The notes beneath the pieces were generated by a model. That model worked only from the letters and a program-made list of their open reading frames with translations, had not been told where the DNA came from and ran no database searches. Shown here piece after piece: positions 12,601 to 62,656 of a stretch of 64,000 nucleotides of DNA. Position numbers and translations under genes: made by a program. Where the stretch lies: contig CDMY01000351.1 of assembly GCA_001179505.1 (NCBI GenBank), positions 41,913 to 105,912 of the forward strand, given 5' to 3'. Each line of letters starts with the position of its first letter. The first letter of the stretch is position 1. The stretch is from Vitrella brassicaformis CCMP3155. Its lineage: Eukaryota > Protista > Chromerida.

Positions 12601-15600
12601 GACACAGAGAGACGTGGGTGAATGTCTGCCCCTCGTGAGCACCTGAGTGCTTTCGGCTGTGTCTTGTCGGACTTGGTATCCACTGGCTGTGGCGGCGGTG
12701 CCTTGCCCTTTCCTGCCGGCGCAGGTGCCGCCTTGCCCTTGGCAGCTGCCTTGCCGGCGGCCTCGGCTGCTGCTGCGGGTGGTTTAGGTGCAGAGGAGGT
12801 CAGGGCGGAGAGAGCCGCGTTGAGGAGGTCGTCTGCCATGTCGAGCATTGGTTTGTGAGGAATGTCTCCCACTTCCTGATGAGATCAGAGGAGATGCAGG
12901 AGTGTCTGACGGTTGGATGGATGGGCGTACCTGTGGCTGTGTGCGGAGTTGTTGGTGTGAGGCAAGAGCGAGCAGCCACTCGCCTCGCACCACTGTCCAA
13001 AAGGCGCTGCAGTAGCCGTCGTAAACATCCATAAGACGCCTGCACCCCCCCACATGCACACACCAAAGGAAAATCTGCGGACTTCCATTTCCTCCCTCCC
13101 TCCCCCCCCCCCCCCCCCNNNNNNNNNNNNNNNNNNNNNNNNNNNNNNNNNNNNNNNNNNNNNNNNNNNNNNNNNNNNNNNNNNNNNNNNNNNNNNNNNN
13201 NNNNNNNNNNNNNNNNNNNNNNNNNNNNNNNNNNNNNNNNNNNNNNNNNNNNNNNNNNNNNNNNNNNNNNNNNNNNNNNNNNNNNNNNNNNNNNNNNNNN
13301 NNNNNNNNNNNNNNNNNNNNNNNNNNNNNNNNNNNNNNNNNNNNNNNNNNNNNNNNNNNNNNNNNNNNNNNNNNNNNNNNNNNNNNNNNNNNNNNNNNNN
13401 NNNNNNNNNNNNNNNNNNCCCCTCTCTCACTCAGCCAGCTGCCACTGCCCCATCTCCGTCACCGCCTTATCGTTGGCCTCGTCATCAATCGGCAGGTCGT
13501 TGCGGAACGGCGCCGGACAAGGGTCGGTGTTGATGGCGTCAGATCCGCCTCCCGTGTCTCCTCGTGAAGGGTCGCCATCGTTGCCTCTGGCAGGTGATGT
13601 GATGGATGAGTCGGTGGATGGGGTGAGGAGTGAGGGGAAGGGGAGGTCGTGGCCGCGCGAGATGGACCAGATGAGCCGCTGAGCCGCAGCAAAGTCGCCA
13701 ATCCTGACAGACAGAGACACCGAGAAGGTTGCACTGCACATGGAGGGGTGTGAGGAAGCGTGTGCGGCCGACCGTATCAGAATGGATGCTCGCATGAGTC
13801 GCGACTTGCATGTTCTTTGGGCGTTGCGGCAGATGTCTATCGCGATGTGTTCGTGGAGTGCACAGATGCCCACGAGAGGCGCCAGGGCGAAGTCGTATAG
13901 CTGCAGCGTCTGCACGAACCACTCCAAGGCCTGTCAGCCACCATACCATCGAAGAGAGTAGGCATCATCCCTCCCGAATCGTATCTCTCTCTTCGATCTT
14001 ACCTCCAGAACAGCGACTGGGTCGACGCCGCCCACGCCGGGCTGCGCAAACGCCCCCGAGCCCATCCGCCACCCCTTGACCACCTCACGCACCCGCACGT
14101 CCCACACAATCCCAACACCGGTGCCATTGTTATCGTTGTCGGGTGGCGCATGTGTGTGTGGGGGATGTGCGGCGAGCAGCTGTGTGATAATGGCTGATGC
14201 GAAGAGGGAGACATTGAGGTGCAGCGATGCCTGTGATGGGTGGACGAGTGTTGCGGTGCGGTGGAGGGCGAGGAGGGAGAGGAGGCAGCACTCCGCCCGT
14301 GTGGGTGTCTCGGGGGCACACAGCTCCAGCTGACAAGGCAAGCGGCATCCATCCATCCATATGTAGCATCACCCACACTCCCACTCTCACCCACCTGTTG
14401 CCACGTATCGATGGCGTTGACACTCCTGTAAGTGAAGTCGACTGCCTCCCTCCAGGCCTTGCCCGCCCCCTCTGTGTCTCTGCCCACCCACAGCAAGTGG
14501 CCCAGCTCCAGCAGCGCCTGCACCACCAGGTTGGTCAGCTGCTTCTTGCGCAAGAGCTCAATCGTCTGCCGATAAGACGACACCAGCCGAGACAGATCAG
14601 CGTTGGAGGGCCGACCTGAGTGAGACGCACCAAAGGCCTTTTACCTCCCCTCTTTGTGTGTATGTGTGGAGTAGACGGAGGTTACTTGTGTCTGTGCTGC
14701 TGTTGTTGCTGCTGCTGCTGTCTGTGAGCTGCTGCACGAACTGGGTGAGTGTTCGTTTGTTCTGTCTCCACTCGACGATGGCTGCCGGGGTGGCCTTGCG
14801 GGAGCGGTCGACAGCGGCGGTGAGCAGACTGTGGAGGGCCCTGAACGACCGCAGCTCCTCATACTGACGGAGCGCCCCATACACACACGTGTTTTACATG
14901 TGTGTCGGATTGTCGCCCTTTCCGCTCGCGCTCACCTGTTGGCTGAGCACGTCGGCATAGACTTGCTTTCTGTGGTTGTAGAGCTGCTCCTCATCAGACA
15001 AGAGACCAGCCAACGCCAGGGCCCTGCGTACACACAGAGAAAGGATCGCGTTGCGTGTAGAAGTGTGTGGTCCGCGAGTGTGAGCCGCCCGCACGTACCG
15101 CGCTTTTCTCCTGTCCTTGACTTTGTTGTAGTGGTCGAACTCTGCCTGTGTGGCCGAGACATGCTCCTCCGTGGCCTTGATGGCCGCACGGCACTGCTCT
15201 ATGACATGCTCTTGAGCGGAGAGTGCGAAGGGCAGCAGCTGACCTGCATCACCACAGACACAGTATGGTTGGTTACTCGTGGGCGTGTGTGTCTGTGTGT
15301 GTGTGTGTGTGTGTGTTGTGGGTATGGGTGCGTGTTTTGCTGACTGACCGGCGAATGAGTCGTTGGTGAGGGCGTTGAACTGTCTGATGATGCCTATGAC
15401 AGCCGGCCACTTGCGGCGTGTGAAAGCGCACTGCACAGCGATGCCCACCAGACGGCCCAAGGCAGGCACATCCACGCCGCTGCTCACCATCCCTGCACTC
15501 ACACACACATAGACACACACACATAGATGGGATGGAGACAGTTGGTGGGATTGGCTGGCTCACCTTACCTTCGAACCACTGGTCTTCTCCCCTGTCTTCG

Positions 15601-49522: not shown

Positions 49523-49689
49523 CGTTTCTGATTCGGATGCATCCAACTTGAATCTACTGTGGGGGCGAGAAAGGGAGACGGCGAGAAAAGGGGGGGAAAC
49601 TTGAAGTTCCTCCAAAAAACAGCTGTCTGCTCAGGAGTCCGAAGCAAGGAAGACGGACACTATCGACTGTGACGACGCTCGGCTTTGCG

Positions 49690-50250
49690 TATCTGTTTGG
49701 ATTGCCTTCACAAGACCCGGTGGGTGAGCCGACATGTACACGCATGAGAGATGGGGATGACATCGTGTGCCCATGTGTCGTGTCTGCAGGTGAGTTTTCG
49801 TGAGCCCTGGGTTGTACGGGTGGATGACGGAGCAGATAATATTTATGTTATGCCGCCTCGCCGAGATACACGCAGACGGAAAAGTCATGCTCGGTACCAC
49901 AGACGCAGAAAAAACAGACACGGAATGACACGCGTCGAATATGTCTGTGGCTGCAGTGCTGGAGGGCGGGTACAACCCAGAGATGCTCTCTAAAGCGTCC
50001 ATTCTGTTGGTCAAGGCCCTCCTCAAGACGAGCGACAGAGACGCCGCACTCACGCCAGAGGCATTCGTACTGTCGCCCGTCAAACCATGGACAGGCAAAC
50101 CCAGCCATCGCAATGATGATGCCTTCCTTGTATCATCTGTTGTGTTTGCATCGCTCACCAGGGGAATTTCCCACCCACAGGGTGTTGCGGGACGATGGCG
50201 ACATGAGACAATTGACATCGAGAAGATGCGCAGATTTATCATCTTCACTC
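49690..50250 (+). pseudogene. C-terminal fragment of a class II-type histone deacetylase domain
   Basis: Restored reading ...DPVG|EFSVSPGLYGWMTEQIIFMLCRLAEIHADGKVML|VLEGGYNPEMLSKASILLVKALL. Frameshifts near 49700 and 49800. Upstream catalytic motifs not seen. Confidence 0.7.
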
Positions 50251-50308
50251 GTGAGAAGAAATTGATCGATCAATTCAATATGGATGCCCTTTTTCTGTCT
50301 ATCGTCAG

Positions 50309-51010
50309 CTGGTGAAGAAGCTTAAGCAGCTGTACGAGCGCTTCAGCCTCCTCATTGCCCTCCCCCCGCCCCCGTCAATGCCCAAAAACGAGCCCACACC
50401 CACTCCTCCGCCAGCCACCGCTCCAGAGACACGATGCACCAAGAAATCCGGACGCAGCGAGCCAGCCGCCAAAGCAAGGCCACTTATCAAGACGGGAGTG
50501 TGGTGGTCTGGAAAAACTCGGGCGTGGGCGGCAAGCTGGTACGAGAAGGGCGACCCGAAGCAGAAGGCCAAGCACTTTTATGTCAAGGATCATGGATTCG
50601 AGAAAGCAAAGGTACCATAGCCAACATCCCACCCAAGCCAATACATCCTTTCCTCTGCTCTCCTTGTCTTCCCTCATCACGTGTCATCAGACATTGGCCA
50701 AAGAGCATTGTCATGAGCTGAGCGGACAGATACGGTGGCGACGAAGAAGGGCTTGGAGTTGAAGCACCAAAGCGGCGTGGAGAGGGTACCTTCAAGAACA
50801 AGACGTGGAGGGCCTCCTGAAAGAGGGCGGGAAGAGGAAGCGCAAAGCCTTTTCGGCGCGCAAGCTGGGATACGAGGGTGCCAAACAGACGGCCATCACT
50901 CACCGCCGCCAGATGGAACAACGGCACCATCCCATTCTCAAGGGCGAGGCCATGCAAGACGACGAGCAGGAGGAGACACAGCCACAGTTGGCTCAACTAA
51001 GGACTATTAT
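50309..51010 (+). pseudogene. Two ApiAP2-type AP2 domains (first intact, second frameshifted)
   Basis: AP2-1: TGVWWSGKTRAWAASWYEKGDPKQKAKHFYVKDHGFEKAK|TLAKEHCHEL (50495-50726, intron 50612-50690). AP2-2: HQSGVE..V / FKNKTWRAS / KEGGKRKRKAFSARKLGYEGAKQTAITHRRQME, needing two or three 1-nt corrections. Confidence 0.75.
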
Positions 51011-51839
51011 CTGTGTCTCTGCCTGTCGTCAGCGATTGCAGGCATCCCACCGATGAAGGGCGGATGCCATCGCTGTCTACATTTTATACTCGACGTTTGT
51101 GCTTCTGTTGCCGGACACGACTCATTCGGACCTTTTTGCTGACACGACTTGGCTAGACAGCTGACCAGCTGCAGAGAGGTGGAAGCGGGCAAACGATGCA
51201 CATGGAAGGCCATGAATGATCCGTTCACATATGAGGTCATACACACACACAAATATAAAAGGTACACAGAGACACCCACAAGTCCACTTCCATGCACCAA
51301 TCCTGCGGCCACGTCGGCTGTGCGCGACCTCACATGGCCAGTGCACCACCATCGCCATCAAAATGCTCAACACAACTTACGGCTGCCGTCCCGTTACCGG
51401 CTTTCAAGATTTCTTTTGTCAAACGCCCTGTCTGAGTGCGCGTGTGTCTCCTGTGCAGAAGCCCAAGTAACACTACTTCGTGCTCATGTCTCGTAGTCGT
51501 GAACAGGTTACCTCTCCCTCTCCCCGTGTGTGTCTGCCTGCCTGCCTGTCTCTCAACTTCGATGGGCCGCTGCTCGTTTTTGAGCAGACCAAAGGACCAG
51601 GGAGAGATGAGAGGCAGGTGTGACCGGTGAGTAGTGGATAGTTGAGACACGATATTGGCGGGTAGGACGCTTAACACTGATTGTCAGCAGTCTTCGATAT
51701 GCATCGTCGAGTCTCACATTCAGCTGACTGAATGTTCCATTGTCACGTCATGTATACAGAGGCCTCCCATCCAGACGATTGCACTCACGAGATCTGACCA
51801 TCGACACAGCACACAGAAGACAATTATGAGAACTAGGTG

Positions 51840-53662
51840 TCACCAGCCCATCGATACCTGGCCATCGGCTGTTTCTGCACGCACTGCCTCAGTGAGGGTC
51901 TTCACATCGGCCTCGAGTGCTTTCTCTTTATCCCGTAGCTTTTTTTCGATTTCCTCTCGGCTCTCACGACACCACTGTGATTCCCCCTCCCACTGCAGAA
52001 AGACAAAGACATCATACCCACTTGTGTAATCTAGGTTTCACTCATCTAGGTCTTTTCGTACGGGTTCTTGTCGCTGAGCATTCTCCTTGCGAATCAGTGC
52101 ATTGGATCGCATCAGAAGGGCAGCGTAGCGTGCCTGATTGGTGTGCCCGCCATAGTCATAGTAGTCGTCCGAATGTCGAGCCCCATTGGCTTTGAGGAGG
52201 ACGGCGACATCCTTCAGCTCAAGCTGTATCACCTGTGAGATGACACCCAGTCAGTCCGTATGTGTGTGAAATTCGATGGCATCCATCTCATTATTTTTCA
52301 CCCGCCCACCACTTCGTCGAGAGGCGCCACGACTAGGCCGCCGACCAGCTGATGTCTGCCAAGATTGGGGTCTGCTCCGGCTTCCAACAGCAGCTCCACA
52401 GTCCTGAATATTCGATTGGCAGCGACAGCATCCCACACCAAGCGGCTGTTACTGTAGGTCTCTGTCTCGGCCATCACTGCGCGATGTAGAGGCTCTCCGT
52501 TTGCCATGTTGGGATTTGCCCCACTGTCGAGAAGCGTCTTGACAGCCATGAAGGCATCTCTTGTCCCTTCTTGATAGCCGCGGACGCCAAAGAAATCGTA
52601 TAGTCGCTGCCTCATGCTTTTCCACCCGGTGTCTCCCTTTCGGATTTGATTGATGCGGTCGATGAGCTCGGCGTGTTGGAGTCCCGTGAAGACTGTAATC
52701 AGCTGACAACTGACAACCGCCACCGTCAGAATGATGTTGGCAATGGGGAGCAGCTGCAGCTGGTAAGTGGGATAGCAGAGGAAGAGGGCATTGCATATCA
52801 GGCCGACAAGTTTTTCGCAGAGTATGCTGGAGAGACGGGGCACTGTGTGCAGCAGTAAGGCGCTGGCGTCAACTTTGGCCTCGAGCATGGAGAGACGAAT
52901 CACTATCGCAGGAAGATATCTTCGGGCATCATGTTTGGCCTCGATTGTTGCGATTTGAGAAGGGTAGAGGAGGCAGGTTTCTGTGGCGGGGCAGAGAAAG
53001 TAGAGGTGCCACAGCCATGTGGGGACCCTCTCGCTGGACACCGCGATCGTGAAGAAGGTAATCCAGGTGCTGGTTGTGTAGACAATCTCCGCAATCAGCA
53101 CGTGCAAAAGACCCAATCGGGTCGAGCAGGTTGCGCAACAAAGCATGCACGAGACATATAGAAATGCCATAAAAGGAAACAGCATCAGCAGGATGGAAGC
53201 CCACCATAAGAAGCCCCCAATCCAGCTCCACCCCCAATAAGCACAAAGAGCACCGATCACCCCCAACTTGGGCCCCAAGACCGCAAGCCCCGGATCCTCT
53301 GGTCTTCCCGCTTTGGCTAGCTGTTGTATCTGCTTGTAGGCTGAGGCGATGGCATTCAGCAGATTCAAGGAGAGATTGCTGATAAGTATTCCCATCGCAC
53401 GGCTTCGGGGGTTGCCGATGGCATAAAGAATGATCACGATGTTGATGAAGTCGATGCTGTCGTTGAGGACGGAGATGCGGCTCAGCACCGTGATCATCCT
53501 GACGAGCCACCGAGGAGGGCCGGGCCGGTAGAAGCGAGTGATGATGGGTGCCGGGGAAGACGGCCCTCGCGGGGTCGCTGCCTGAGAGTCCACGCCCGAG
53601 TCGATGAGACGGGAGTATTCGCCTAATTCGATGTCGCCCGAGGGTCCCTTTTTGCGCTGCAC
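51840..53662 (-). CDS. Array unit 1 (terminal): multi-TM + ankyrin repeats + coiled coil, natural C-terminus
   Basis: Exon A 53662-52310 (open, 451 codons; VKTLLDSGANPN, EPLHRAV, VELLLEAGADPN), exon B 52232-52062 (LKDVAVLLKANGA), exon C ...EEIEKKLRDKEKALEADVK...AETADGQVSMGW-TGA. Confidence 0.75.
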
Positions 53663-53724
53663 CTGAGCAACCGCAATGCACAAGTCGTCAGCAAACTGCT
53701 CACACAAAGGCTTCTCCTGCGTAC

Positions 53725-55961
53725 CAGTGTGGCATTCATTTGGACGTACTCCAGGCACCATTTGAGGACGAGCAGAGCTGTCGAGACAGAGGCAGAGGCG
53801 AGAAGGAGCCGCTTGCACAGGAGGGGGATTGTGTACTGGGACGGCTCGTCGATAATCATCTCCCAGAAGGAGAACCAGTCGGTCACTGCACAATGTCATA
53901 TGCAATGGGGGCAGAGAGGGAGCAATATACATCATGATGGGAGAGAGATGAAGATCCCTGCTGTTGCTTACGTGCCGCGAAGACCCCCAGTAGGATAAGC
54001 ATTATGTTCTCTTCGAGAAATTTCTGCAATGAGACCCTTCTGGGCCCTTGGCTGGACAAAACCGACGATGCGAAGATCCGTCCATCAGCTGTTTCTGCAC
54101 GCACTGCCCCAGCAAGGTCTTTCAAGTCGGCTCTCAAGGTTTTCTCTTCATCCTCTAGCTCTTTTACGATTTCCTCTTGTCGCTGTGGTTCCTCCTTCCA
54201 CTGCAGAAAGACAAAGACATCATACCCACTTGTGTGATCTAGGTTTCAATTATCTAGGTCTTTTCGTACGAATTCTTGTCGCCAAGCATCAAATTCGCCA
54301 ATCAGCTCTTTCGATCGCATCAAAAGGGCAGCGTAATGTTCATGGTTGGTGTGTCCGCCGTATTTATAGTAGTCGTCCGAATGTCGAGCCCCATTGGCTT
54401 TGAGGAGAACGGCGACATGGTTCAGCTCCGGCTGTATCACCTGCACAAACATGGCACTCAGTCAAGCCACGTGTGTGAATCTGTGGCATCCGTCTCTTCA
54501 TGCTTATCCGCCCACTCACCACTTCGTCGAGAGGCGCCACGACTAGGTCGCCGGCCAGCTGACGTGTGCCAAGATTGGGGTCTGCTCCGGCTTCCAACAG
54601 CAGCTCCACAGTGTTGAAAATCCAAGCAGCTTCAGCATCCCACAGCAAGGGCCTGTCGCTGTCGGTCGCTGCCCCGGCCATGACTGCGCGATGAAGCGGC
54701 TCGCCGCACGCCATATTGGGATCTGGGCCAATATCAAGGAGCGTCTTGACAGCCACCAAAGCATCAGCTTTCTGATACCCCCTCTCGGGATAGAAACAGT
54801 GAGCTAAACGCTCTCCCATGCTTTTCCACTCGGTGTCTCCCTTTCGGATTTGATCGATGCGGTCGATCAGCTCGGCGTGTTGGAGTCCTGTGAGCTCTGC
54901 AATCAGTTGACAACTGATGACTGCCACCGTCAGAATGATGTTGGCAATGGGGAGCAGCTGCAGCTGGTAAGTGGGATAGCAGAGGAAGAGGGCATTGCAT
55001 ATCAGACCGAGAAGGTCTTCGCAGAGTATGCTGGAGAGGCGATTGCGTCTCGCATCACGATGGCTTCTGGCGTCAACTTTGGCCTCGAGTATGGTGAGAA
55101 GAGAGGGATAGAGCATGAAGGTCCCTACCAGAGGGGAGAGAAAGTAGAGGCGCCAGAGCCATGTGTGGACTCTCTCGCTGAAGACCGCAGCCGTGAAGAA
55201 AGTAATCCAATCGGTGATTGCATCGACAAGCTCCGGAATCAGCACGTGCAAAAGACCCAATCGGCTGTAGTCAAAGAGAAGAACTTCTGAAAGAAGCTCC
55301 TTCGGAATCAACCAGTGCGTCACGACGCCAGTAAGGATTTCGATCCCAATGGCGACGAGGAAGACCAGAACAGCACCATATCAGAAGACTCCTCCACAAA
55401 GAATGAAGATTGCCCAGATCCACGAAGCAGGGACTGCACCTAGCAACGCACCCATCGCCCCGCAGAAACACACTATGGGGGCCGCTATGTGCGCCCGCCC
55501 AGATAGCCAGCGTCGATTGGACGATTGCAATAAGGTATCGGACGGTTGCGCGAGCCCTGGATGCTCTTTCAGTGCGGCTGTGAGGTTTTGCGCCAGCTGT
55601 TCTTGCATCTGCTCTTCGGAGGCTTCGAGTCCCATGGCTTCGTAGGCTGAGGCGATGGCATTCAGCAGATTCAAAAACAGATTGCAGATGAGTGTGCCGA
55701 TAGCACCGGCTCCTGGGTTGGCGCAAAGAATGATCACGACGTTGATGGAGTCGATGCTGTCGTTGAGGACGGAGATGCCGCTCAGCACCGTGATCATCCT
55801 GACGAGCCACCGAGGAGGGTCGGGCCGGTAGAAGCGAGCGATGATGGGTGCCGTGGGAGACGGCCCTCGCGGGTCGCTGCCTGGGAGTCCACGCCCGAGT
55901 CGATGAGATGGGAGTATTCGCCTAACTCCATGTCGCCCGAGGGTGGCTTTTTGCGCTGCAC
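53725..55961 (-). pseudogene. Array unit 2, with a 1-nt deletion and an in-frame TGA in exon A
   Basis: GGG at 55871-55873 versus GGGG in units 1 and 3. TGA at 55381-55383 in GVF*YGAVL. Exons A 55961-54520, B 54440-54270, C 54200-53972, D 53885-53725. Confidence 0.8.
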
Positions 55962-56025
55962 CTGACCGGCCGCAATGCACCAAAGTCGTCAGCAAATTGC
56001 TCACACAAAGGCTTCTCCTGCGTAC

Positions 56026-58604
56026 CAGTGTGGCATTCATTTGGGCGTACTCCAGGCACCATTTGAGGACGAGCAGAGCCGTCGAGACAGAGGCAGAGGC
56101 GAGAAGGAGCCGCTTGCACAGGAGGGGGATTGTGTACTGGGACGGCTCGTCGATAATCATCTCCCAGAAGGAGAACCAGTCGGTCACTGCACAATGTCAT
56201 ATGCAATGGGGGCAGAGAGGGAGCAATATACATCATGATGGGAGAGAGATGAAGATCCCTGCTGTTGCTTACGTGCCGCGAAGGCCCCCAGGAGGATAAG
56301 CATTATGTTCTCTTCGAGGAATTTCTGCAATGAGACACTTCTGGGCCCTTGGCTGGACAAAACCGACGATGCGAAGATCCGTCCATCAGCTGTTTCTGCA
56401 CGCACTGCCCCAGCAAGGTCTTTCAAGTCGGCTCTCAAGGTTTTCTCTTCATCCTCTAGCTCTTTTACGATTTCCTCTTGTCGCTGTGGTCCCTTCTTCC
56501 ACTGCAGAAAGACAAAGACATCATACCCACTTGTGTGATCTAGGTTTCAATTATCTAGGTCTTTTCGTACGAATTCTTGTCGCCAAGCATTCTCCTTGCG
56601 AATCAGTGCATTGGACCGCATCAGAAGGGCAGCGTAGCGTGCCTGATTGGTGTGTCCGCCATAGTCATAGTAGTCGTCCGAATGTCGAGCCCCATTGGCT
56701 TTGAGGAGGACGGCGACATCCTTCAGCTCAGGCTGTGTCACCTGCACAAACATGGCACGCAGTCAGGCTTTCTTTATGCTTATCCCCCCACTCACCACTT
56801 CGTCGAGAGGCGCCACGACTAGGCCACCGACCAGCTGACGTGTGCCAAGATTGGGGTCTGCTCCGGCTTCCAACAGCAGCTCCACAGTGTTGAATATCCG
56901 AGCAGCTTCAGCATCCCACGGCAAGGGCCTGTCGCTGTCGGTCGCTGCCTCGGCCATGACTGCGCGATGTAGAGGCTCGCCACATGACATGTTTGGATCT
57001 GCGCCACCGTCGAGAAGCTTCTTCACAGCCACCAAGGCATCAACTGTCCCTTCTTGATAGCCGCGGACGCCAGAGAAGCCGTACATGGCCACTACCGCAT
57101 CGTGTCCGTTTCGAATTTGATCGATGCTGTCGATGAGCTTGGCATGTTGGAGTCCCGTGAACTCTGTAATCAGCTGACAACTCAAAAGTGCCACCGTCAG
57201 AATGATGTTGGCTATTGGGAGCAGCTGCAGTTGATAAGTGGGATAGCGGAGGAAGAGAACATTGCATGTGAGGCCGAGAAGGCCTCCAACCCTCATGTCG
57301 TAGAAACGATTATCTTTGGTCGGATGGCGATGGGATCTGGCGTCAATTCTCTCTTTGAGTGTTGCGATTAGAGAAGGGTAAAGGATGAGGGTTTCTGTAG
57401 AGGGGCACAGAAAGTAGAGGTGCCAAAGCCACGTCGGGACTCTCTCGCTAGACACCGCAATCGTAAAGAAGGTAATCCAGCTGCTTGTTGTATAGATAAG
57501 CTCTGGAATCAGCACGTGCAAGAGACCCAATCGGCTGTAGTCGGAGAGAAGAATATCCGAAAGGAACTCCTTCGGGATCAGGCAATGCGTCACGACGCCA
57601 ACAACGAGCCCAGACATTAGCGTCACCAGCATCAAAGTTAAGGCAAGCCACCAGAAAAGACGCCCAATCCAACTTATCCACCAAAACCAGGAATCACCCA
57701 GAAGGGCGCCGATCACTCCAGAAGGAGCATAAAGCACGCCGATCACGCCGCATGAACAAATATAGCTGCCCATACCAGACAAACGTCGAAGACGACCAAA
57801 CATCATATGTTCGGGCTCACTCCAAAGTCCACTCCAGAGTCCGCTTAGAATTTGGTTGAACTCCTGCAAGCGCTCTTGCGAGGCTTCAAAAAGCCTGGTC
57901 ATGTAGGCTGAGGCGATGGCATTCAGCAGATTCAAAAACAGATTGCAGATGAGTATTGCCATCGCGTGGCTTCGGGGATTGCCGATGGCGCAAAGAATGA
58001 TCACGACGTTGATGGAGTCGATGCTGTCGTTGAGGACGAAGATGCGGCTCAGCACCGTGATCATCCTGACGAGCCACCGAGGAGGGTCGGGCCGGTAGAA
58101 GCGAGCGATGATGGGTGCCGTGGGAGACGGCCCTCGCGGGGTCGCTGCCTGGGAGTCCACGCCCGAGTCGATGAGATGGGAGTATTCGCCTAACTCCATG
58201 TCGCCCAAGGGTGGCTTTTTGCGCTGCACCTGAGCGGCCGCAAGGCACCAAAGTCGTCAGCAAACTGCTCACACAAAGGCTTCTCCTACGTACCAGTGTG
58301 GCATTCATTTGGGCGTACTCCAGGCACCATTTGAGGACGAGCAGAGCCGTCGAGACAGAGGCAGAGGCGAGAAGGAGCCGCTTGCACAGGAGGGGGATTG
58401 TGTACTGGGACGGCTCGTCGATAATCATCTCCCAGAAGGAGAACCAGTCGGTCACTGCACATGTGCAATGGGGAAGAAAGAGAGACATTATGACGGCTTG
58501 AGAGATAGTAAGATCCCTGCTGTTGCTTACGAGACGCGAAGGCGCCCAGGAGGATAAGCATTATGTTCTCTGGGAGGAACATTTGCCATGAGACCCCTCT
58601 GGGA
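56026..58604 (-). CDS. Array unit 3 (intact) plus the distal exons of unit 4; start lies in or beyond the gap
   Basis: Unit 4 exon C (to 58531) and D 58454-58294. Unit 3 exons A 58229-56796 (478 codons, open), B 56741-56571, C 56501-56273, D 56186-56026. Confidence 0.75.
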
Positions 58605-58904
58605 NNNNNNNNNNNNNNNNNNNNNNNNNNNNNNNNNNNNNNNNNNNNNNNNNNNNNNNNNNNNNNNNNNNNNNNNNNNNNNNNNNNNNNNNNNNNNNNN
58701 NNNNNNNNNNNNNNNNNNNNNNNNNNNNNNNNNNNNNNNNNNNNNNNNNNNNNNNNNNNNNNNNNNNNNNNNNNNNNNNNNNNNNNNNNNNNNNNNNNNN
58801 NNNNNNNNNNNNNNNNNNNNNNNNNNNNNNNNNNNNNNNNNNNNNNNNNNNNNNNNNNNNNNNNNNNNNNNNNNNNNNNNNNNNNNNNNNNNNNNNNNNN
58901 NNNN
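58605..58904. other. Assembly gap (300 N) truncating the tandem array
   Basis: Run of N. The true array copy number is unknown. Confidence 1.
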
Positions 58905-58999
58905 GGGAACCCCGACGGTGGAAGCTCACAGCTTACGAGGAAGCCGGCGAGCTTAGGGAGGGCGAGCTTAGGGAGGAGCTCGCGAAGCCAAGGATTTCA

Positions 59000-59022
59000 G
59001 ACTTTCGCGAAACCGCTCTCTC
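59000..59022 (+). promoter_or_regulatory. Variant of the recurrent upstream motif (GACTTTCGCGAAACCGCTCTCTC)
   Basis: Shares GAC.TTC..GAAACCGCTCTCTC with copies 1 and 2 and has a palindromic core TTTCGCGAAA. Lies just beyond the gap at the presumed 5' end of the array gene. Confidence 0.4.
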
Positions 59023-59246
59023 AAGGGATTCAATCAACGGCAATGATGTATTCACAGGCAGTGTGTGTGGTCTCGTCAGTGCAGACAGACACGGACGGAC
59101 GGCACAAGTATGTCAATCAGAGACGACCATAAACACAGGTACTAACACAGGTACACACATACGCAGAAACGCCTCCCTGTGTGTGGAACACCGGGAGGTA
59201 CACGTGAGGCAGCTGCTGGCTGTACATCCATCCATCTACACTGTCG

Positions 59247-60771
59247 TCACACCGACCCATAGATGAGCCCCTCTACGCGTCTCGGCTCTGGCTGAGGAGC
59301 CTGACACACACACACACGCACACACACAGGGGTGCGCATGATGCCCGCATCTCGTCCTCGTCATGTCAGTCTGCGCCACGTACGTGTGATGAGGTGACGA
59401 CCTGGTAGGATGTGCCCGTCATCTCGTCCTCGTCTGCACGACAGATGTACACAAAGCCATCAGGACAGACAGACACGCGTCATGGCATTGGCATGGTGGG
59501 CGCCGGTCGGCCGACCAGGGTCTGGGAAGCTGAAGTTGCTCATTGAGGCGCCCCTGTCTGCAACAATGAGGACAGCGGACATCTACACATCCAATCTTGA
59601 ATGTACGTGTGTGCGTACCGTTTCTCTTGTGCGTGTGGCGCGAGAGGGACGGAAGGCCTTACCCCCCACACACCCACATACACACACACACACACACACA
59701 TGCATCCGTGCGGTTACACTGGTGTTGCTGGGTGAGAGGGTACCTGTGTTGCCCTCTCCTACAGGCCGATATCTGTTGTTGGCATTGTACACCCAATCAG
59801 CCTGTCGATGGATAAATGGATGGAGGCACACACACCCATGTGTGTGGACGTGTATGTGTATGTGTACGTGTGTGTGTGTGTGCGTACAATCTGGACGAAG
59901 AACATCCTGACTTGGCCGACCACCGGCAAATACGGCGGGCCGCCTGACACAAGCGGGCAGATATAATACGTGCAGTTGTGGCCCTCCCTTTGGGGTATGC
60001 GAACCTCCTTTGGTGAAGTTCTGGTACAAAAGATACATGTATATCACAAAGAACTGCACACACACACGCGTCAACACAGGCCTGCCTGCCTGCTATCCAT
60101 CTCTGTGTGTGTGTCTGTCTGTGTGGATGGCTGAATGGCTCATCCCCACCGACCAGGATGGCTGTCCAGAAGATGGATTTGTATGCGATCCGGATAAACA
60201 GCCACAAGGGATGGGACAACAGATGCAGCAAATTAGACCTGCATATATCAATGTGTGCACACATACGCCCCAACAACACGTCTGTGGCGGTGTCAGTGAG
60301 CGTACACCGAGATGAGGGTGAGCGGCGACCCGGTGCAGTGTTTGCGGACGAGGAACTGGACGTCCTTGTAGAAGGGAATGTCGAGCGACACAAGCACCAC
60401 CGACCAGCCCACACCGTGGCAGTTGTAGATCAGCTCGACCTTGCGCGGCTTCTCGTCCGTCGGGAACCAAGCCTTGTGCGGCTCTGATACAAACACACAG
60501 TGACACGTGTGGATGGAAGGATGGATTGGTGACGGCTTGCCTGTTGCGGTGAGTGGCCAGTCGTCGCTGGGCAGCTCAAGGGACGGCCACACGACCTGCA
60601 TGTCGGCAGCTGAGTGCAACCATGTGGACAAAAAAGACAAAAGACAGAATGACATAAAGTGCCTCCGGCACCTTTCTCTCTCTCCCCCTGTGCGTGCGTG
60701 TGCACCTATGCTAGGCCGCTGGAAGTAAACAGGAGGGGAGCAGTCCTTGCTGATACGCACACACACAGACA

Positions 60772-60808
<37 letters not shown>

Positions 60809-62656
60809 GTGAGTCGAGTTGTGATGGGTACGTATCGGTGCATACGCCCACCACCACACATAGAAGACCGTCGCCGCATGCCCCTTGTCAACGTGGTTCA
60901 ACGCAGTGCTCTGACCCACCTGCACACGCCCGTCAGCCACAAACAGGCACACGTGCCATGGATGTATGGGTGCCTCCGGATGAGCGCGTGTGTGTATTTG
61001 CTTACATCGCCCCATCCGCCGATGGCCCTGCCATTGTACACCACATCGGCCTCGTGCGGCTTGGTGCCCACCATCAGACCTGCACGCAACACCAACACAC
61101 ACACATATATAATAATACCCAACACACGACGCAGTGTGTATGGCTGTCTGTGTGTCAGGGGTGTCCGGACCCTGTTTGGGGACGATCTCTGCCGGCAGTG
61201 TGGTGCAGTCCACTCGCCAGCCGATGTGCACAGATGGGCAGCCGTGCGGGTGCAGCGTCACATTGATCTGTACGTGTGTGGATGCGTGTGGACACACACG
61301 TACACGATATGTATGTATACGAGCGCGCGTGTGTGTGTGTGTGTGTGTGCTGACCGGGAAGACGGCTTGTTGGGCGCAGTTGAGGTACTGTATCTGCAGC
61401 TCGAGGATGTTCCTCCCCTGTGGGTCTACGTGTTTCCTCAGGTACTGCAGACCGTCAGCTGACCACATGCACACACACACGCCAGGACACACACATGCAC
61501 ATGCTCCCTTGATTCCTCTTTGTGTGCAGAAATGGTGTGTGTGTACAATCTCTGAGGGTGAAATGAATCTCCAGGCCGGACGGGGTGCTCACTGCTGGAT
61601 GGTCCAGCTTTCCTGACACACACACACACACACACACAAATGGACGCAACACGCACCGACACACATACCATGTGAGGCTATCTTGAATATCGACATGGGC
61701 GTGGTGTGGGGGTTAATCAGCGGATTCCTGCAACACCACACAGACACGTACACCCGCATCATGATGCCCGGCATCTCATCTCATCGCAACTCATCTCATC
61801 ATCTCATCATCTCATCTCTCCGGGTACCTTTCGTCCATATTGAGAAGTGCCTTCTCTTCCCTGACCACTCCTATGCGCTGTGGTGGGCTGCCCAACGCAC
61901 TGCCGACTGTCGGATGGCCTGACATACACAACACACACGTGCACCCACCAAACAGCATAGAACACACTGTCTGTCGGTGTGTGTGTGTGTGTTACATACC
62001 AGAGATGGCCGCGTTGGTGGGAATGGGTATCCACTCGGGCATCACCACAGAGTTCTGAACCACACTGACCACCGGCACACACACACACACACACACACAC
62101 AGATGGACCGATAAGGTGCACATAGGCACTGCATATGTGAGTGGGCGTGCACGGCTGCATACGTGGCCTTGTCGTGTGTCTTGTCGTTGCTGAGCTGCTC
62201 CACCATCTGCGCCGACTCGGGAGATACATACACCACAGACAGAGCTGCCAAGCCAGGCCATGGACACACGCACCAAGACACACACACACACACACATCAA
62301 CGCCATGATTTTTTATGTCATGGGCGCTTCTCGCGTGTGTGTGCTTACATCTGCAGACTTCATCCATAGATACGGGCCCATCAGACAGACACCGGCAGGG
62401 AAACAGCTGCACACAAACACACGACGCCCAGATGGATGGATGGATGCCGATGGTGCACATGGATCCACTGGATCTCGTACGTGTGCCGCGACAAGAAAGA
62501 GCCACCGGACAGCGCCGCGCTCATACAGCGTCCGTCGTTTCATTCCTCTGATGAATCACACAGTCCATTCATCAACGCATGTGACATTCAGTCTGCATTT
62601 GATGACTATCCGTGTGTGTGTTTCGCTCACCTGGCCACGGCTCGTGTACTTTTCAT
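59247..62656 (-). CDS. Many-exon single-pass membrane protein, Cys-containing lumenal region, C-terminal YGSV
   Basis: ATG at 62656 (MKSTRAVAR|GMKRRTLYERGAVRWLFLVAAH). Phase-consistent exons including LELQIQYLNCAQQ, GLMVGT...ADVVYNG, VELIYNCHGVGWSVVLV...FLVRKHC, a hydrophobic span SIFWTAILVGG/FFVIYMYLLY, and a last exon ...EGLIYGSV-TGA. Confidence 0.6.

What the first reader, a model, noticed from the sequence alone, without database searches (positions are those of the whole stretch)
51840..58604. Tandem array whose exons form a closed in-frame loop: a self-concatenating TM-ankyrin-coiled-coil protein
Seen in the sequence: each ~2.3-kb unit has four exons with canonical GT-AG introns and phases A(0-0, 1353 nt in unit 1, 1434 nt in unit 3), B(0-0, 171 nt), C(0-1, 229 nt), D(1-0, 161 nt). 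Exon D splices in frame into exon A of the next unit (...AQMNATL|VQRKK...). The apparent stop after KDLDN falls inside intron B-C (donor TTC|GTACGA). Only the terminal unit diverges after AVRAETADG and stops, so the duplication breakpoint fuses the coiled-coil tail to an upstream exon without shifting frame. Inference: the locus can encode a concatemer of ~665-aa modules (several TM helices, ~3 ankyrin repeats, coiled coil). That would be a covalently linked pseudo-oligomeric membrane protein, analogous in principle to how four-domain Nav/Cav channels arose by internal duplication, rather than separate paralogs. I do not recognise the family.
Basis: partly seen in the sequence, partly recalled or inferred. 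Interest (0 to 1): 0.85.

Follow-up and report, generated by a model that had tools for sequence, protein, structure and literature searches.

The report
In-frame fused gene array, middle copy broken
The alga Vitrella brassicaformis carries three head-to-tail copies of a species-only membrane-protein gene whose reading frames do run into one another, but here the middle copy is broken and only the last copy is seen as RNA, as an ordinary single-copy message.

Summary
The repeat is real: three ~2.3-kb units lie on the minus strand. Each unit joins the next through a hybrid exon with no stop, so the in-frame loop exists.

Exon A of the middle unit is 1442 nt, with a 1-nt deletion and an in-frame TGA. 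The last unit does not stop at QVSMGW: a further 64-nt intron is spliced out and the protein ends ...ADGQ-IS-stop.

RNA-like contigs cover only unit 3. They begin 22 nt after the junction, and the first ATG downstream gives a 619-aa single-unit protein. So a three-module concatemer cannot be translated from this locus as assembled. An ORF starting in unit 1 would end 55 codons into unit 2.

Genome-wide, the family is known only from Vitrella and one related metagenome contig, and it forms arrays of 2, 3, 3 and 6 units. Each array has one 5' flank with a start codon and one terminal intron, stop and 3' UTR. All 10 internal junctions are open and in frame. The linker shows coding constraint (pN/pS 0.37). 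Multi-module translation elsewhere, especially in the six-unit array, stays open.

The parts
58905..60418 (-). Upstream flank of the array (5' flank of unit 1), shared with the flank of the first unit of the C280 40-kb array
   Evidence: 91% identity over 1.5 kb to L031:360-1865; nearly identical over the ~300 nt next to the gap
58605..58904 (.). Assembly gap (300 N). By comparison with the C280 array it hides about 100 nt, including the start codon of unit 1 (MMAGGQ... type)
58531..58604 (-). Unit 1 exon 1, visible part. Holds the conserved Met at 58561; donor GTAAGC
   Evidence: public model P0020
58294..58454 (-). Unit 1 exon D (161 nt, phase 1-0)
56796..58229 (-). Unit 1 exon A (1434 nt, open): multi-pass membrane region with a hypervariable middle, then ankyrin-like repeats
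56571..56741 (-). Unit 1 exon B (171 nt)
56273..56501 (-). Hybrid exon 1/2 (229 nt): coiled-coil end of unit 1 fused in frame to the exon-1 part of unit 2
56026..56186 (-). Unit 2 exon D
54520..55961 (-). Unit 2 exon A, broken (1442 nt, not a multiple of 3)
55871..55873 (-). C-run with a 1-nt deletion (3 C here, 4 C in units 1 and 3). It shifts the frame; the spliced ORF from unit 1 then stops at 55796-55794
55381..55383 (-). In-frame TGA in the homologous frame of unit 2 exon A
   Evidence: DNA contigs over 55235-55504 show no difference
54270..54440 (-). Unit 2 exon B (open)
53972..54200 (-). Hybrid exon 2/3. The RNA contig of unit 3 begins inside it at 54059; the first ATG downstream is at 54002-54000
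53725..53885 (-). Unit 3 exon D, spliced in RNA
   Evidence: (X7 record 26)
52310..53662 (-). Unit 3 exon A (1353 nt, open), covered by RNA contigs
52062..52232 (-). Unit 3 exon B
51858..51992 (-). Unit 3 exon C (135 nt), ending ...AETADGQ with donor GTATCG
51656..51793 (-). Terminal exon E: codons I, S, stop (TGA at 51787-51785), then a 3' UTR with an element conserved at the end of every array and of the isolated copy read there (C619 32 kb)

Best explanation
This is a three-unit head-to-tail array of a gene family seen only in Vitrella brassicaformis and one related metagenome contig. One unit encodes about 620-650 aa. It has an N-terminal multi-pass membrane domain (about 8-10 hydrophobic helices with a hypervariable middle stretch), two to three ankyrin-like repeats and a short charged coiled-coil-like tail.

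The ancestral single gene has its own start and stop. Two isolated copies on contig C619 show this; one of them also carries a frameshift near the end of exon A. In the arrays, the last coding exon of one copy is fused in frame to exon 1 of the next. The fusion lies at a short motif, A-(G/D)-G-(Q/E/R), that occurs at both ends of the coding sequence, which is why the frame is kept (inferred). As a result each array has one 5' flank with a start codon and one terminal intron, stop and 3' UTR.

At this locus the chain is interrupted:
- Unit 1 is intact, but its frame runs on into unit 2 and stops after 55 codons of unit 2's exon A.
- Unit 2 is a pseudogene, with one frameshift and one nonsense codon.
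- Unit 3 is intact and is transcribed by itself. Its RNA starts in the hybrid exon about 22 nt after the junction and uses the conserved Met (ATG at 54002). Five introns are removed, giving a 619-aa single-unit protein.

Shown: the anatomy, the lesions, the splicing and the unit-3-only RNA contigs. Inferred: the transcription start, the origin by recombination at the shared motif, the membrane topology and any function. The most likely function is an oligomerising membrane protein whose variable stretch diversifies between copies.
For: - Units, exons and phases.
- Unit 2 lesions. DNA contigs agree with the assembly.
- RNA-like contigs of run X7 join 54059-53972 | 53885-53723 | 53660-53336 and 52940-52307 | 52229-52062 | 51992-51858 | 51793-51656. 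X7 has zero depth in every bin above 54100. Run X1 shows the B-C and D-A joints of unit 3.
- The unit 3 model closes at 1860 nt, which is 619 codons plus the stop.
- Isolated copies with their own start (MASAPDP...) and stop (...ARRRN) give models of 615 and 510 aa; the shorter one comes from the copy with the frameshift.
- Every array has one first unit with its own ATG and one terminal unit with the extra intron, an (I/L/V)-S-stop and a conserved 3' UTR.
- Family range: 7 strong hits among 1.84 billion representatives, and the named members are Vitrella gene models; one further relative sits on an ENA metagenome contig, and the remaining hits match only the ankyrin part.
- Ankyrin part: a profile of the family matches repeat proteins in the PDB at E 1e-12 and ankyrin 1n11 at 7e-5.
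Against: - Contigs show presence, not absence. X7 depth on unit 3 is only 3-10, so a rare long transcript through units 1 and 2 could be missed, and a contig end is not a mapped transcription start.
- The linker upstream of the conserved Met shows coding constraint in internal units (pN/pS 0.37, 10 of 10 junctions in frame). That fits translation entering from the preceding unit better than a 5' UTR.
- Internal units have no stop, no conserved 3' UTR and no obvious promoter of their own.
- An MMETSP transcript ORF (P0017) crosses a junction of the type found in this window, with its introns removed.
- DNA contigs carry an extra joint, 57497|55228, at single-copy depth, so the assembled array may be incomplete.
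Confidence: 0.6

Rival explanations
1. The arrays are single genes, and their normal product is a multi-module chain. This would be either a covalent pseudo-oligomer or a polyprotein that is later cut at the linker. The locus in this window is a recently damaged example, or an example whose lesions are specific to this strain.
For: - Each array has one promoter-side flank with a start codon and one stop with a 3' UTR.
- All 10 internal junctions are open and in frame, with length changes in multiples of three.
- The linker has pN/pS 0.37 in frame against 0.77 and 1.25 in the shifted frames.
- All six units of the C280 119-kb array have open exon A. Through unit 5 they can be linked by homologous GT-AG sites or direct open reading; my site patterns found no A-to-B link in unit 6, which public model P0001 does join.
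- The MMETSP ORF P0017 crosses a junction.
- Membrane-protein polyproteins are a known device in euglenids and dinoflagellates (PMC3480386).
Against: - Here unit 2 stops the frame, and RNA contigs cover unit 3 alone.
- Two of three units in the C280 40-kb array are also broken.
- P0017 is a mosaic of several paralogues. It may be an assembler chimera or come from another strain (my comparison of the sequences).
- No transcript-derived ORF longer than 443 aa was found in three protein searches.
- Gene conversion from first-unit exon 1, which is coding anyway, could mimic constraint on the linker.
Confidence: 0.25
2. Part of the picture is an assembly artefact. The unit count, the gap or the unit 2 lesions would come from collapsing or mis-joining near-identical repeats.
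For: - A 300-N gap lies at the head of the array.
- Exon D and some introns are 99-100% identical between units.
- DNA contigs of runs X2 and X3 carry a joint 57497|55228 ('goes back 2270') at the same depth as single-copy contigs. They also carry skips of 104 and 75 nt inside unit 3.
Against: - DNA contigs of two runs reproduce the assembled sequence over the TGA without change, and no indels are reported anywhere in 51500-57499. These runs may, however, be the data the assembly was built from.
- The three units differ enough in exon A (about 50% identity in the middle) to be told apart.
- The sequence just after the gap is of the first-unit type, so the gap need not hide further units.
Confidence: 0.08
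3. The units are separate genes transcribed as one long precursor and resolved by spliced-leader trans-splicing and polyadenylation, as in dinoflagellate tandem arrays.
For: - The units are packed tightly with no intergenic spacer.
- The organism is an alveolate related to dinoflagellates. This is general knowledge; PMC2488372 turned up, and only its title and abstract were seen.
Against: - No stop codon separates the units.
- The X7 contig starts at 54059 with no foreign leader sequence attached, since its record starts at letter 1.
- TTGTCCAG at 54059-54052 lies inside the contig, so that AG is not used as a splice acceptor.
- I know of no spliced leader in chromerids (from memory, not tested).
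Confidence: 0.05

Closest known systems
Polyubiquitin genes (general knowledge, not tested here)
   Same: Whole protein units are repeated head to tail in one frame without spacers. There is one start, one stop and a few extra residues after the last unit. The repeats are homogenised by unequal crossing-over and gene conversion.
   Different: Here a unit is about 650 aa and 2.3 kb, carries four introns and encodes a multi-pass membrane protein. Units have diverged to about 50% identity in one region. Several units are broken, and at this locus the last unit is transcribed alone.
Light-harvesting-complex polyproteins of Euglena and dinoflagellates (PMC3480386)
   Same: They are nuclear genes or mRNAs encoding up to about 10 consecutive membrane-protein units joined by short linkers. 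They arose by duplication and fusion, evolve in concert, and occur in a related group of algae.
   Different: Those units are 3-helix plastid proteins with a defined decapeptide or SPLR cleavage linker. Ladders of multi-unit mRNAs were shown for them on Northern blots. Here no cleavage site, no plastid targeting signal and no multi-unit mRNA is shown.
Four-domain Nav/Cav channels
   Same: The idea that a homo-oligomeric membrane protein becomes one chain through internal duplication.
   Different: No sequence or fold similarity to ion-transport domains was found. Module number varies from 2 to 6 between arrays, and the chain is broken here.
Lineage-specific tandem gene families with pseudogenes and gene conversion
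   Same: Copy number differs between loci and conversion tracts are mosaic: exon D is 99-100% identical between units while the middle of exon A is about 50%. Some members are dead, and purifying selection is weak (pN/pS 0.5-0.74).
   Different: Ordinary tandem paralogues keep their own starts, stops and spacers. Here the units share a hybrid exon and a continuous frame.

Membership tests
Ankyrin-repeat proteins (Pfam PF00023 / PF13637) | Two or more ~33-residue helix-turn-helix repeats that match the Ank profiles | tested here: met
   Single exons score just under the Pfam cut-offs: Ank 17.3-19.6 bits against 21.1, and Ank_4 20.8 against 22.7. A family profile matches repeat proteins in the PDB at E 1e-12 and ankyrin 1n11 at 6.8e-5, over profile positions 447-563. 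Public model P0022 carries precomputed PF00023 and PF13637.
Polyprotein / concatemer genes | Two or more complete protein units in one uninterrupted reading frame | tested here: inconclusive
   Unit 1 runs in frame into unit 2 but stops after 55 codons of its exon A. In the C280 six-unit array all units are open and can be linked through unit 5; the last A-to-B link rests on public model P0001.
Polyprotein / concatemer genes | One mature mRNA spanning several units | tested here: inconclusive
   At this locus, RNA contigs cover unit 3 only. One MMETSP ORF (P0017) crosses a junction but is a mosaic. No transcript-derived ORF above 443 aa was found.
Polyprotein / concatemer genes | Conserved linker that is cleaved, or a full-length multi-module protein in the cell | not testable with these tools
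   The linker is conserved and under constraint. Processing or protein size needs proteomics or a western blot.
Voltage-gated-like ion channels (Ion_trans, PF00520) | A 6-TM module with voltage sensor and pore loop that matches the family profile | tested here: not met
   No Pfam hit at E up to 10. No PDB sequence hit outside the ankyrin part. Atlas structure rows have TM-score 0.38 or less.
XK-related scramblases (PF09815) | Match to the XK-related profile | tested here: not met
   This was only a language-model lead, with score 0.85 and 149 shared features. It gave no hmmscan hit at E up to 10 and did not recur when the membrane part was searched alone.
Pseudogene (unit 2) | Frame-disrupting lesions in an otherwise homologous coding exon | tested here: met
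   A 1-nt deletion at 55873-55871 and a TGA at 55383-55381. Exon length is 1442 nt.

The most novel reading that the evidence does not exclude
In Vitrella, whole ~650-aa multi-pass membrane proteins are strung together in frame. At least the intact six-unit array on contig C280 would be translated as a giant multi-module chain of roughly 3,800 aa. That chain would either be kept as a covalent pseudo-oligomer or be cut at the conserved ADG-(R/Q)-x-F...ENxM linker, giving a polyubiquitin-like or LHC-polyprotein-like way of making a large membrane protein. Internal transcription starts, as seen for unit 3 here, would add shorter versions.
Probability: 0.3. Interest if true: 0.75.

Novelty: new variant of a known kind. 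Interest (0 to 1): 0.5.

Why it matters
If these arrays are translated across units, this would be an unusual case in which a large, intron-containing, multi-pass membrane protein is multiplied in frame like polyubiquitin. It would extend the polyprotein habit of euglenids and dinoflagellates to a chromerid and to a family with no evident plastid link. It would also capture an intermediate stage in how multi-domain membrane proteins arise from oligomers.

Even under the conservative reading, the family shows a clean route to in-frame whole-gene fusion, through a short motif shared by both ends of the coding sequence. It also shows how such chains decay, and that a downstream unit can escape by gaining its own start. 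In practice, the public gene models for all these loci (214-1470 aa) are inconsistent and need long-read RNA to be fixed.

Tried and rejected
- Fold: AlphaFold2 on the isolated full-length model P0019, with a nine-row paralogue alignment, gave mean pLDDT 38.7. That is too poor for a fold search, so none was run.
- Family of the membrane domain: Pfam at E up to 10, a PDB profile search and two Atlas searches gave nothing beyond the ankyrin part. The XK-related lead was not confirmed.
- The look-up of encoding contigs on the public models P0001 and P0005 returned nothing, because records of the window's own genome are withheld.
- The ENA metagenome contig L037 is a truncated first-unit-type copy from a relative (85-90% nucleotide identity). 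It says nothing about unit joining.
- The listing of cluster members did not give the transcript coordinates of P0017.
- Two paper searches found no description of this family or of spliced leaders or polyproteins in chromerids.
- Earlier scan notes held nothing on this locus or family.
- A microhomology at GATGG with a 7-nt offset was considered as the fusion point. I dropped it after right-anchored alignment showed that the first-unit start (M-A-G-G-Q) is colinear and in frame with the junction (x-A-D-G-R/Q) and with the terminal exon end (A-A/D-G-G-E/Q).
- The joined, spliced protein models of my own were not sent to any search or fold tool. Exons were searched one by one by reference, and whole-unit work used public models by id.
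Full report
**What is there**

The window is contig C351:41913-105912 of a 72.7-Mb, 1064-contig genome. Public protein records name it Vitrella brassicaformis CCMP3155. Three units of about 2.3 kb lie head to tail on the minus strand between 58604 and 51650, with mean column identity 82%. Anchoring on conserved splice-site words gives these exons:

| Unit | Exon 1 | D | A | B | C |
|---|---|---|---|---|---|
| 1 | visible part 58604-58531 | 58454-58294 | 58229-56796 (1434 nt) | 56741-56571 | hybrid 56501-56273 |
| 2 | (in hybrid exon above) | 56186-56026 | 55961-54520 (1442 nt) | 54440-54270 | hybrid 54200-53972 |
| 3 | (in hybrid exon above) | 53885-53725 | 53662-52310 (1353 nt) | 52232-52062 | 51992-51858 |

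Exon C of units 1 and 2 runs on without a stop into the sequence that serves as exon 1 of the next unit. The closed in-frame loop is therefore real at both junctions.

Exon A of unit 2 is 1442 nt long. One C is missing from the run at 55873-55871. In the frame that is homologous after that point there is a TGA at 55383-55381. A spliced ORF from the conserved Met of unit 1 (58561) therefore runs through the hybrid exon and exon D, and stops at 55796-55794. That gives 784 aa, plus whatever the gap hides. DNA contigs of two runs agree with the assembly over the TGA, and no indel is reported in 51500-57499.

The terminal unit has one more intron, 51857-51794. Its frame ends ...ADGQ | I S stop at 51787-51785. 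The public model P0022 ends the same way.

**RNA evidence**

Of the four runs laid on the sequence, X2 and X3 behave as genomic DNA: they give colinear contigs with depth in every bin. X7 and X1 skip introns, so they behave as RNA.

- X7 record 26 joins 54059-53972 | 53885-53723 | 53660-53336.
- X7 record 24 joins 52940-52307 | 52229-52062 | 51992-51858 | 51793-51656.
- X1 shows the B-C joint of unit 3. It also has an exon D contig whose loose end matches the start of unit 3's exon A.

X7 has no depth in any bin above 54100, and no contig of X7 or X1 covers the unique parts of units 1 or 2. The 5'-most X7 contig begins 22 nt after the junction. It has no foreign letters attached. The first ATG downstream (54002) opens a frame that closes at 1860 nt, which is 619 aa. 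That is close to the isolated paralogue P0019, at 615 aa.

Two cautions apply. These are contigs of low depth (3-10), so they show presence rather than absence. A contig end is also not a mapped transcription start.

**Family context**

A six-frame search of the genome finds the family in four arrays:

- this window, with 3 units;
- C280 at 40 kb, with 3 units;
- C280 at 94 kb, with 2 units;
- C280 at 119-136 kb, with 6 units.

There are also two isolated copies on C619 and a fragment on C109.

The isolated copies have their own start (MASAPDP...) and a stop just after the coiled-coil-like tail; one of them carries a frameshift near the end of exon A. Every array begins with a unit that has its own flank and ATG (MAGGQ...). 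Every array ends with a unit that has the extra intron, an (I/L/V)-S-stop and a conserved 3' UTR element. Internal units have neither.

The flank upstream of the gap in this window is nearly identical, next to the gap, to the flank of the first unit of the C280 40-kb array, and 91% identical to it over 1.5 kb. The sequence just after the gap is of the first-unit type. The gap therefore most likely hides about 100 nt including the start of unit 1, not further units.

The first-unit start (M-A-G-G-Q), the junction (x-A-D-G-R/Q) and the terminal exon end (A-A/D-G-G-E/Q, then the donor) are colinear and in the same frame. This suggests that the fusion arose by recombination in a short motif present at both ends of the coding sequence. 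That would explain the preserved frame without invoking selection. This step is inferred.

**Is the continuity used?**

All 10 internal junctions are open and in frame, although their lengths differ by whole codons. In six junctions of equal length, the 25 linker codons before the conserved Met give pN/pS 0.37 in frame, against 0.77 and 1.25 in the shifted frames. That is as low as, or lower than, undisputed coding parts (0.51-0.74 between units 1 and 3).

No in-frame ATG lies between the junction and that Met. Constraint on the linker therefore points to translation entering from the preceding unit. The pairs compared are not independent, however, and gene conversion from first-unit exon 1 could give the same picture.

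In the six-unit array all units have open exon A. Through unit 5 they can be linked at homologous GT-AG sites or by direct open reading; my site patterns found no A-to-B link in unit 6, which the public model P0001 joins. Public automatic models already join units: P0021 at 1470 aa, P0001 at 1339, P0022 at 941 and P0002 at 777. They cut the arrays inconsistently.

One MMETSP transcript ORF (P0017, 443 aa) crosses a junction of the type found in this window, with its introns removed. It is a mosaic of several paralogues, so it may be an assembly chimera or come from another strain. No longer transcript-derived ORF turned up.

On the other side, 4 of the 17 exon A copies found are broken: unit 2 here, units 1 and 2 of the C280 40-kb array, and one C619 copy.

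**The protein**

- Hydropathy shows about 8-10 hydrophobic helices in exon 1, exon D and the first 360 codons of exon A.
- Codons of about 111-235 of exon A are barely alignable between units, at about 50% nucleotide identity. Exon D and some introns are 99-100% identical, which is a mosaic typical of gene conversion.
- The end of exon A together with exon B holds ankyrin-like repeats.
- Exon C is a charged helix. It is the only part of the AlphaFold model with pLDDT above 60.
- The membrane domain has no detectable relative. An exhaustive HMMER search gave 7 strong hits among 1.84 billion representatives, and the named members are Vitrella models. One environmental relative exists, at 85-90% nucleotide identity.
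- Pfam, PDB and Atlas searches gave nothing solid.

I take it to be an oligomerising membrane protein with a diversifying segment. Its function is unknown.

**Verdict**

The in-frame head-to-tail architecture is real, occurs across the family and is possibly under selection. This particular locus, however, cannot produce a three-module chain as assembled, and the only RNA seen is a single-unit message of the last copy.

The nearest precedents are polyubiquitin genes (general knowledge) and the LHC polyproteins of Euglena and dinoflagellates (PMC3480386). I file the finding as a new variant of a known kind. Whether the intact six-unit array is translated as one chain remains open.

**Method note**

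My own joined spliced models were not sent to any search or fold tool. Exons were searched singly by reference, and whole-unit analyses used public models by id. In scripts, only phase bookkeeping and single split codons were computed across exon borders.

Noticed in passing
window 57497 and 55228; also 53120-53225 and 53266-53342: DNA contigs of runs X2 and X3 carry a joint that goes back 2270 nt (57497|55228) at the same depth as single-copy contigs. They also skip 104 and 75 nt inside the variable part of unit 3. The real array may hold a hybrid unit or allele that is missing from the assembly.
   Followed up: no
window 51656-51793; the ends of the C280 arrays and of the C619 32-kb copy: A 3' UTR element (around ...CATGACGTGACAATGG...CAGTCAGCTGAATGTGAGACTCGAC) is conserved after the stop of the terminal unit of every array, and a similar motif follows the stop of the 45-54%-identical isolated copy on C619 at 32 kb. 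It may be a regulatory or 3'-end signal.
   Followed up: partly
window 49561-50979 and 58905-60418: Both flanks of the array are duplicated elsewhere. The upstream flank is 91% identical to the flank of the C280 40-kb array, and the downstream flank is 85% identical to sequence beyond the end of the C280 94-kb array. Whole arrays seem to have moved by segmental duplication.
   Followed up: partly
window 52840-52960 (unit 3 exon A): Unit 3 carries an internal duplication of about 20 codons (IEAKHDAR... followed by LEAKVDAS...) that is absent from units 1 and 2.
   Followed up: no
L037 (ENA ERZ893784, contig k147_970655): An environmental metagenome holds a truncated first-unit-type copy at 85-90% nucleotide identity. 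A close relative of Vitrella carrying this family therefore occurs in that sample.
   Followed up: partly
window 54085-54000: The junction carries an out-of-frame ATG (54085-54083). It opens a 25-codon frame whose TAA overlaps the conserved start (ACATAATG). This ATG lies upstream of the observed RNA contig start, and the overlap is not conserved in the other arrays.
   Followed up: partly
window 13119-13418; 59667-59700, 60758-60789, 62076-62101: There is a second 300-N assembly gap, and several (CA)n microsatellites lie upstream of the array.
   Followed up: no
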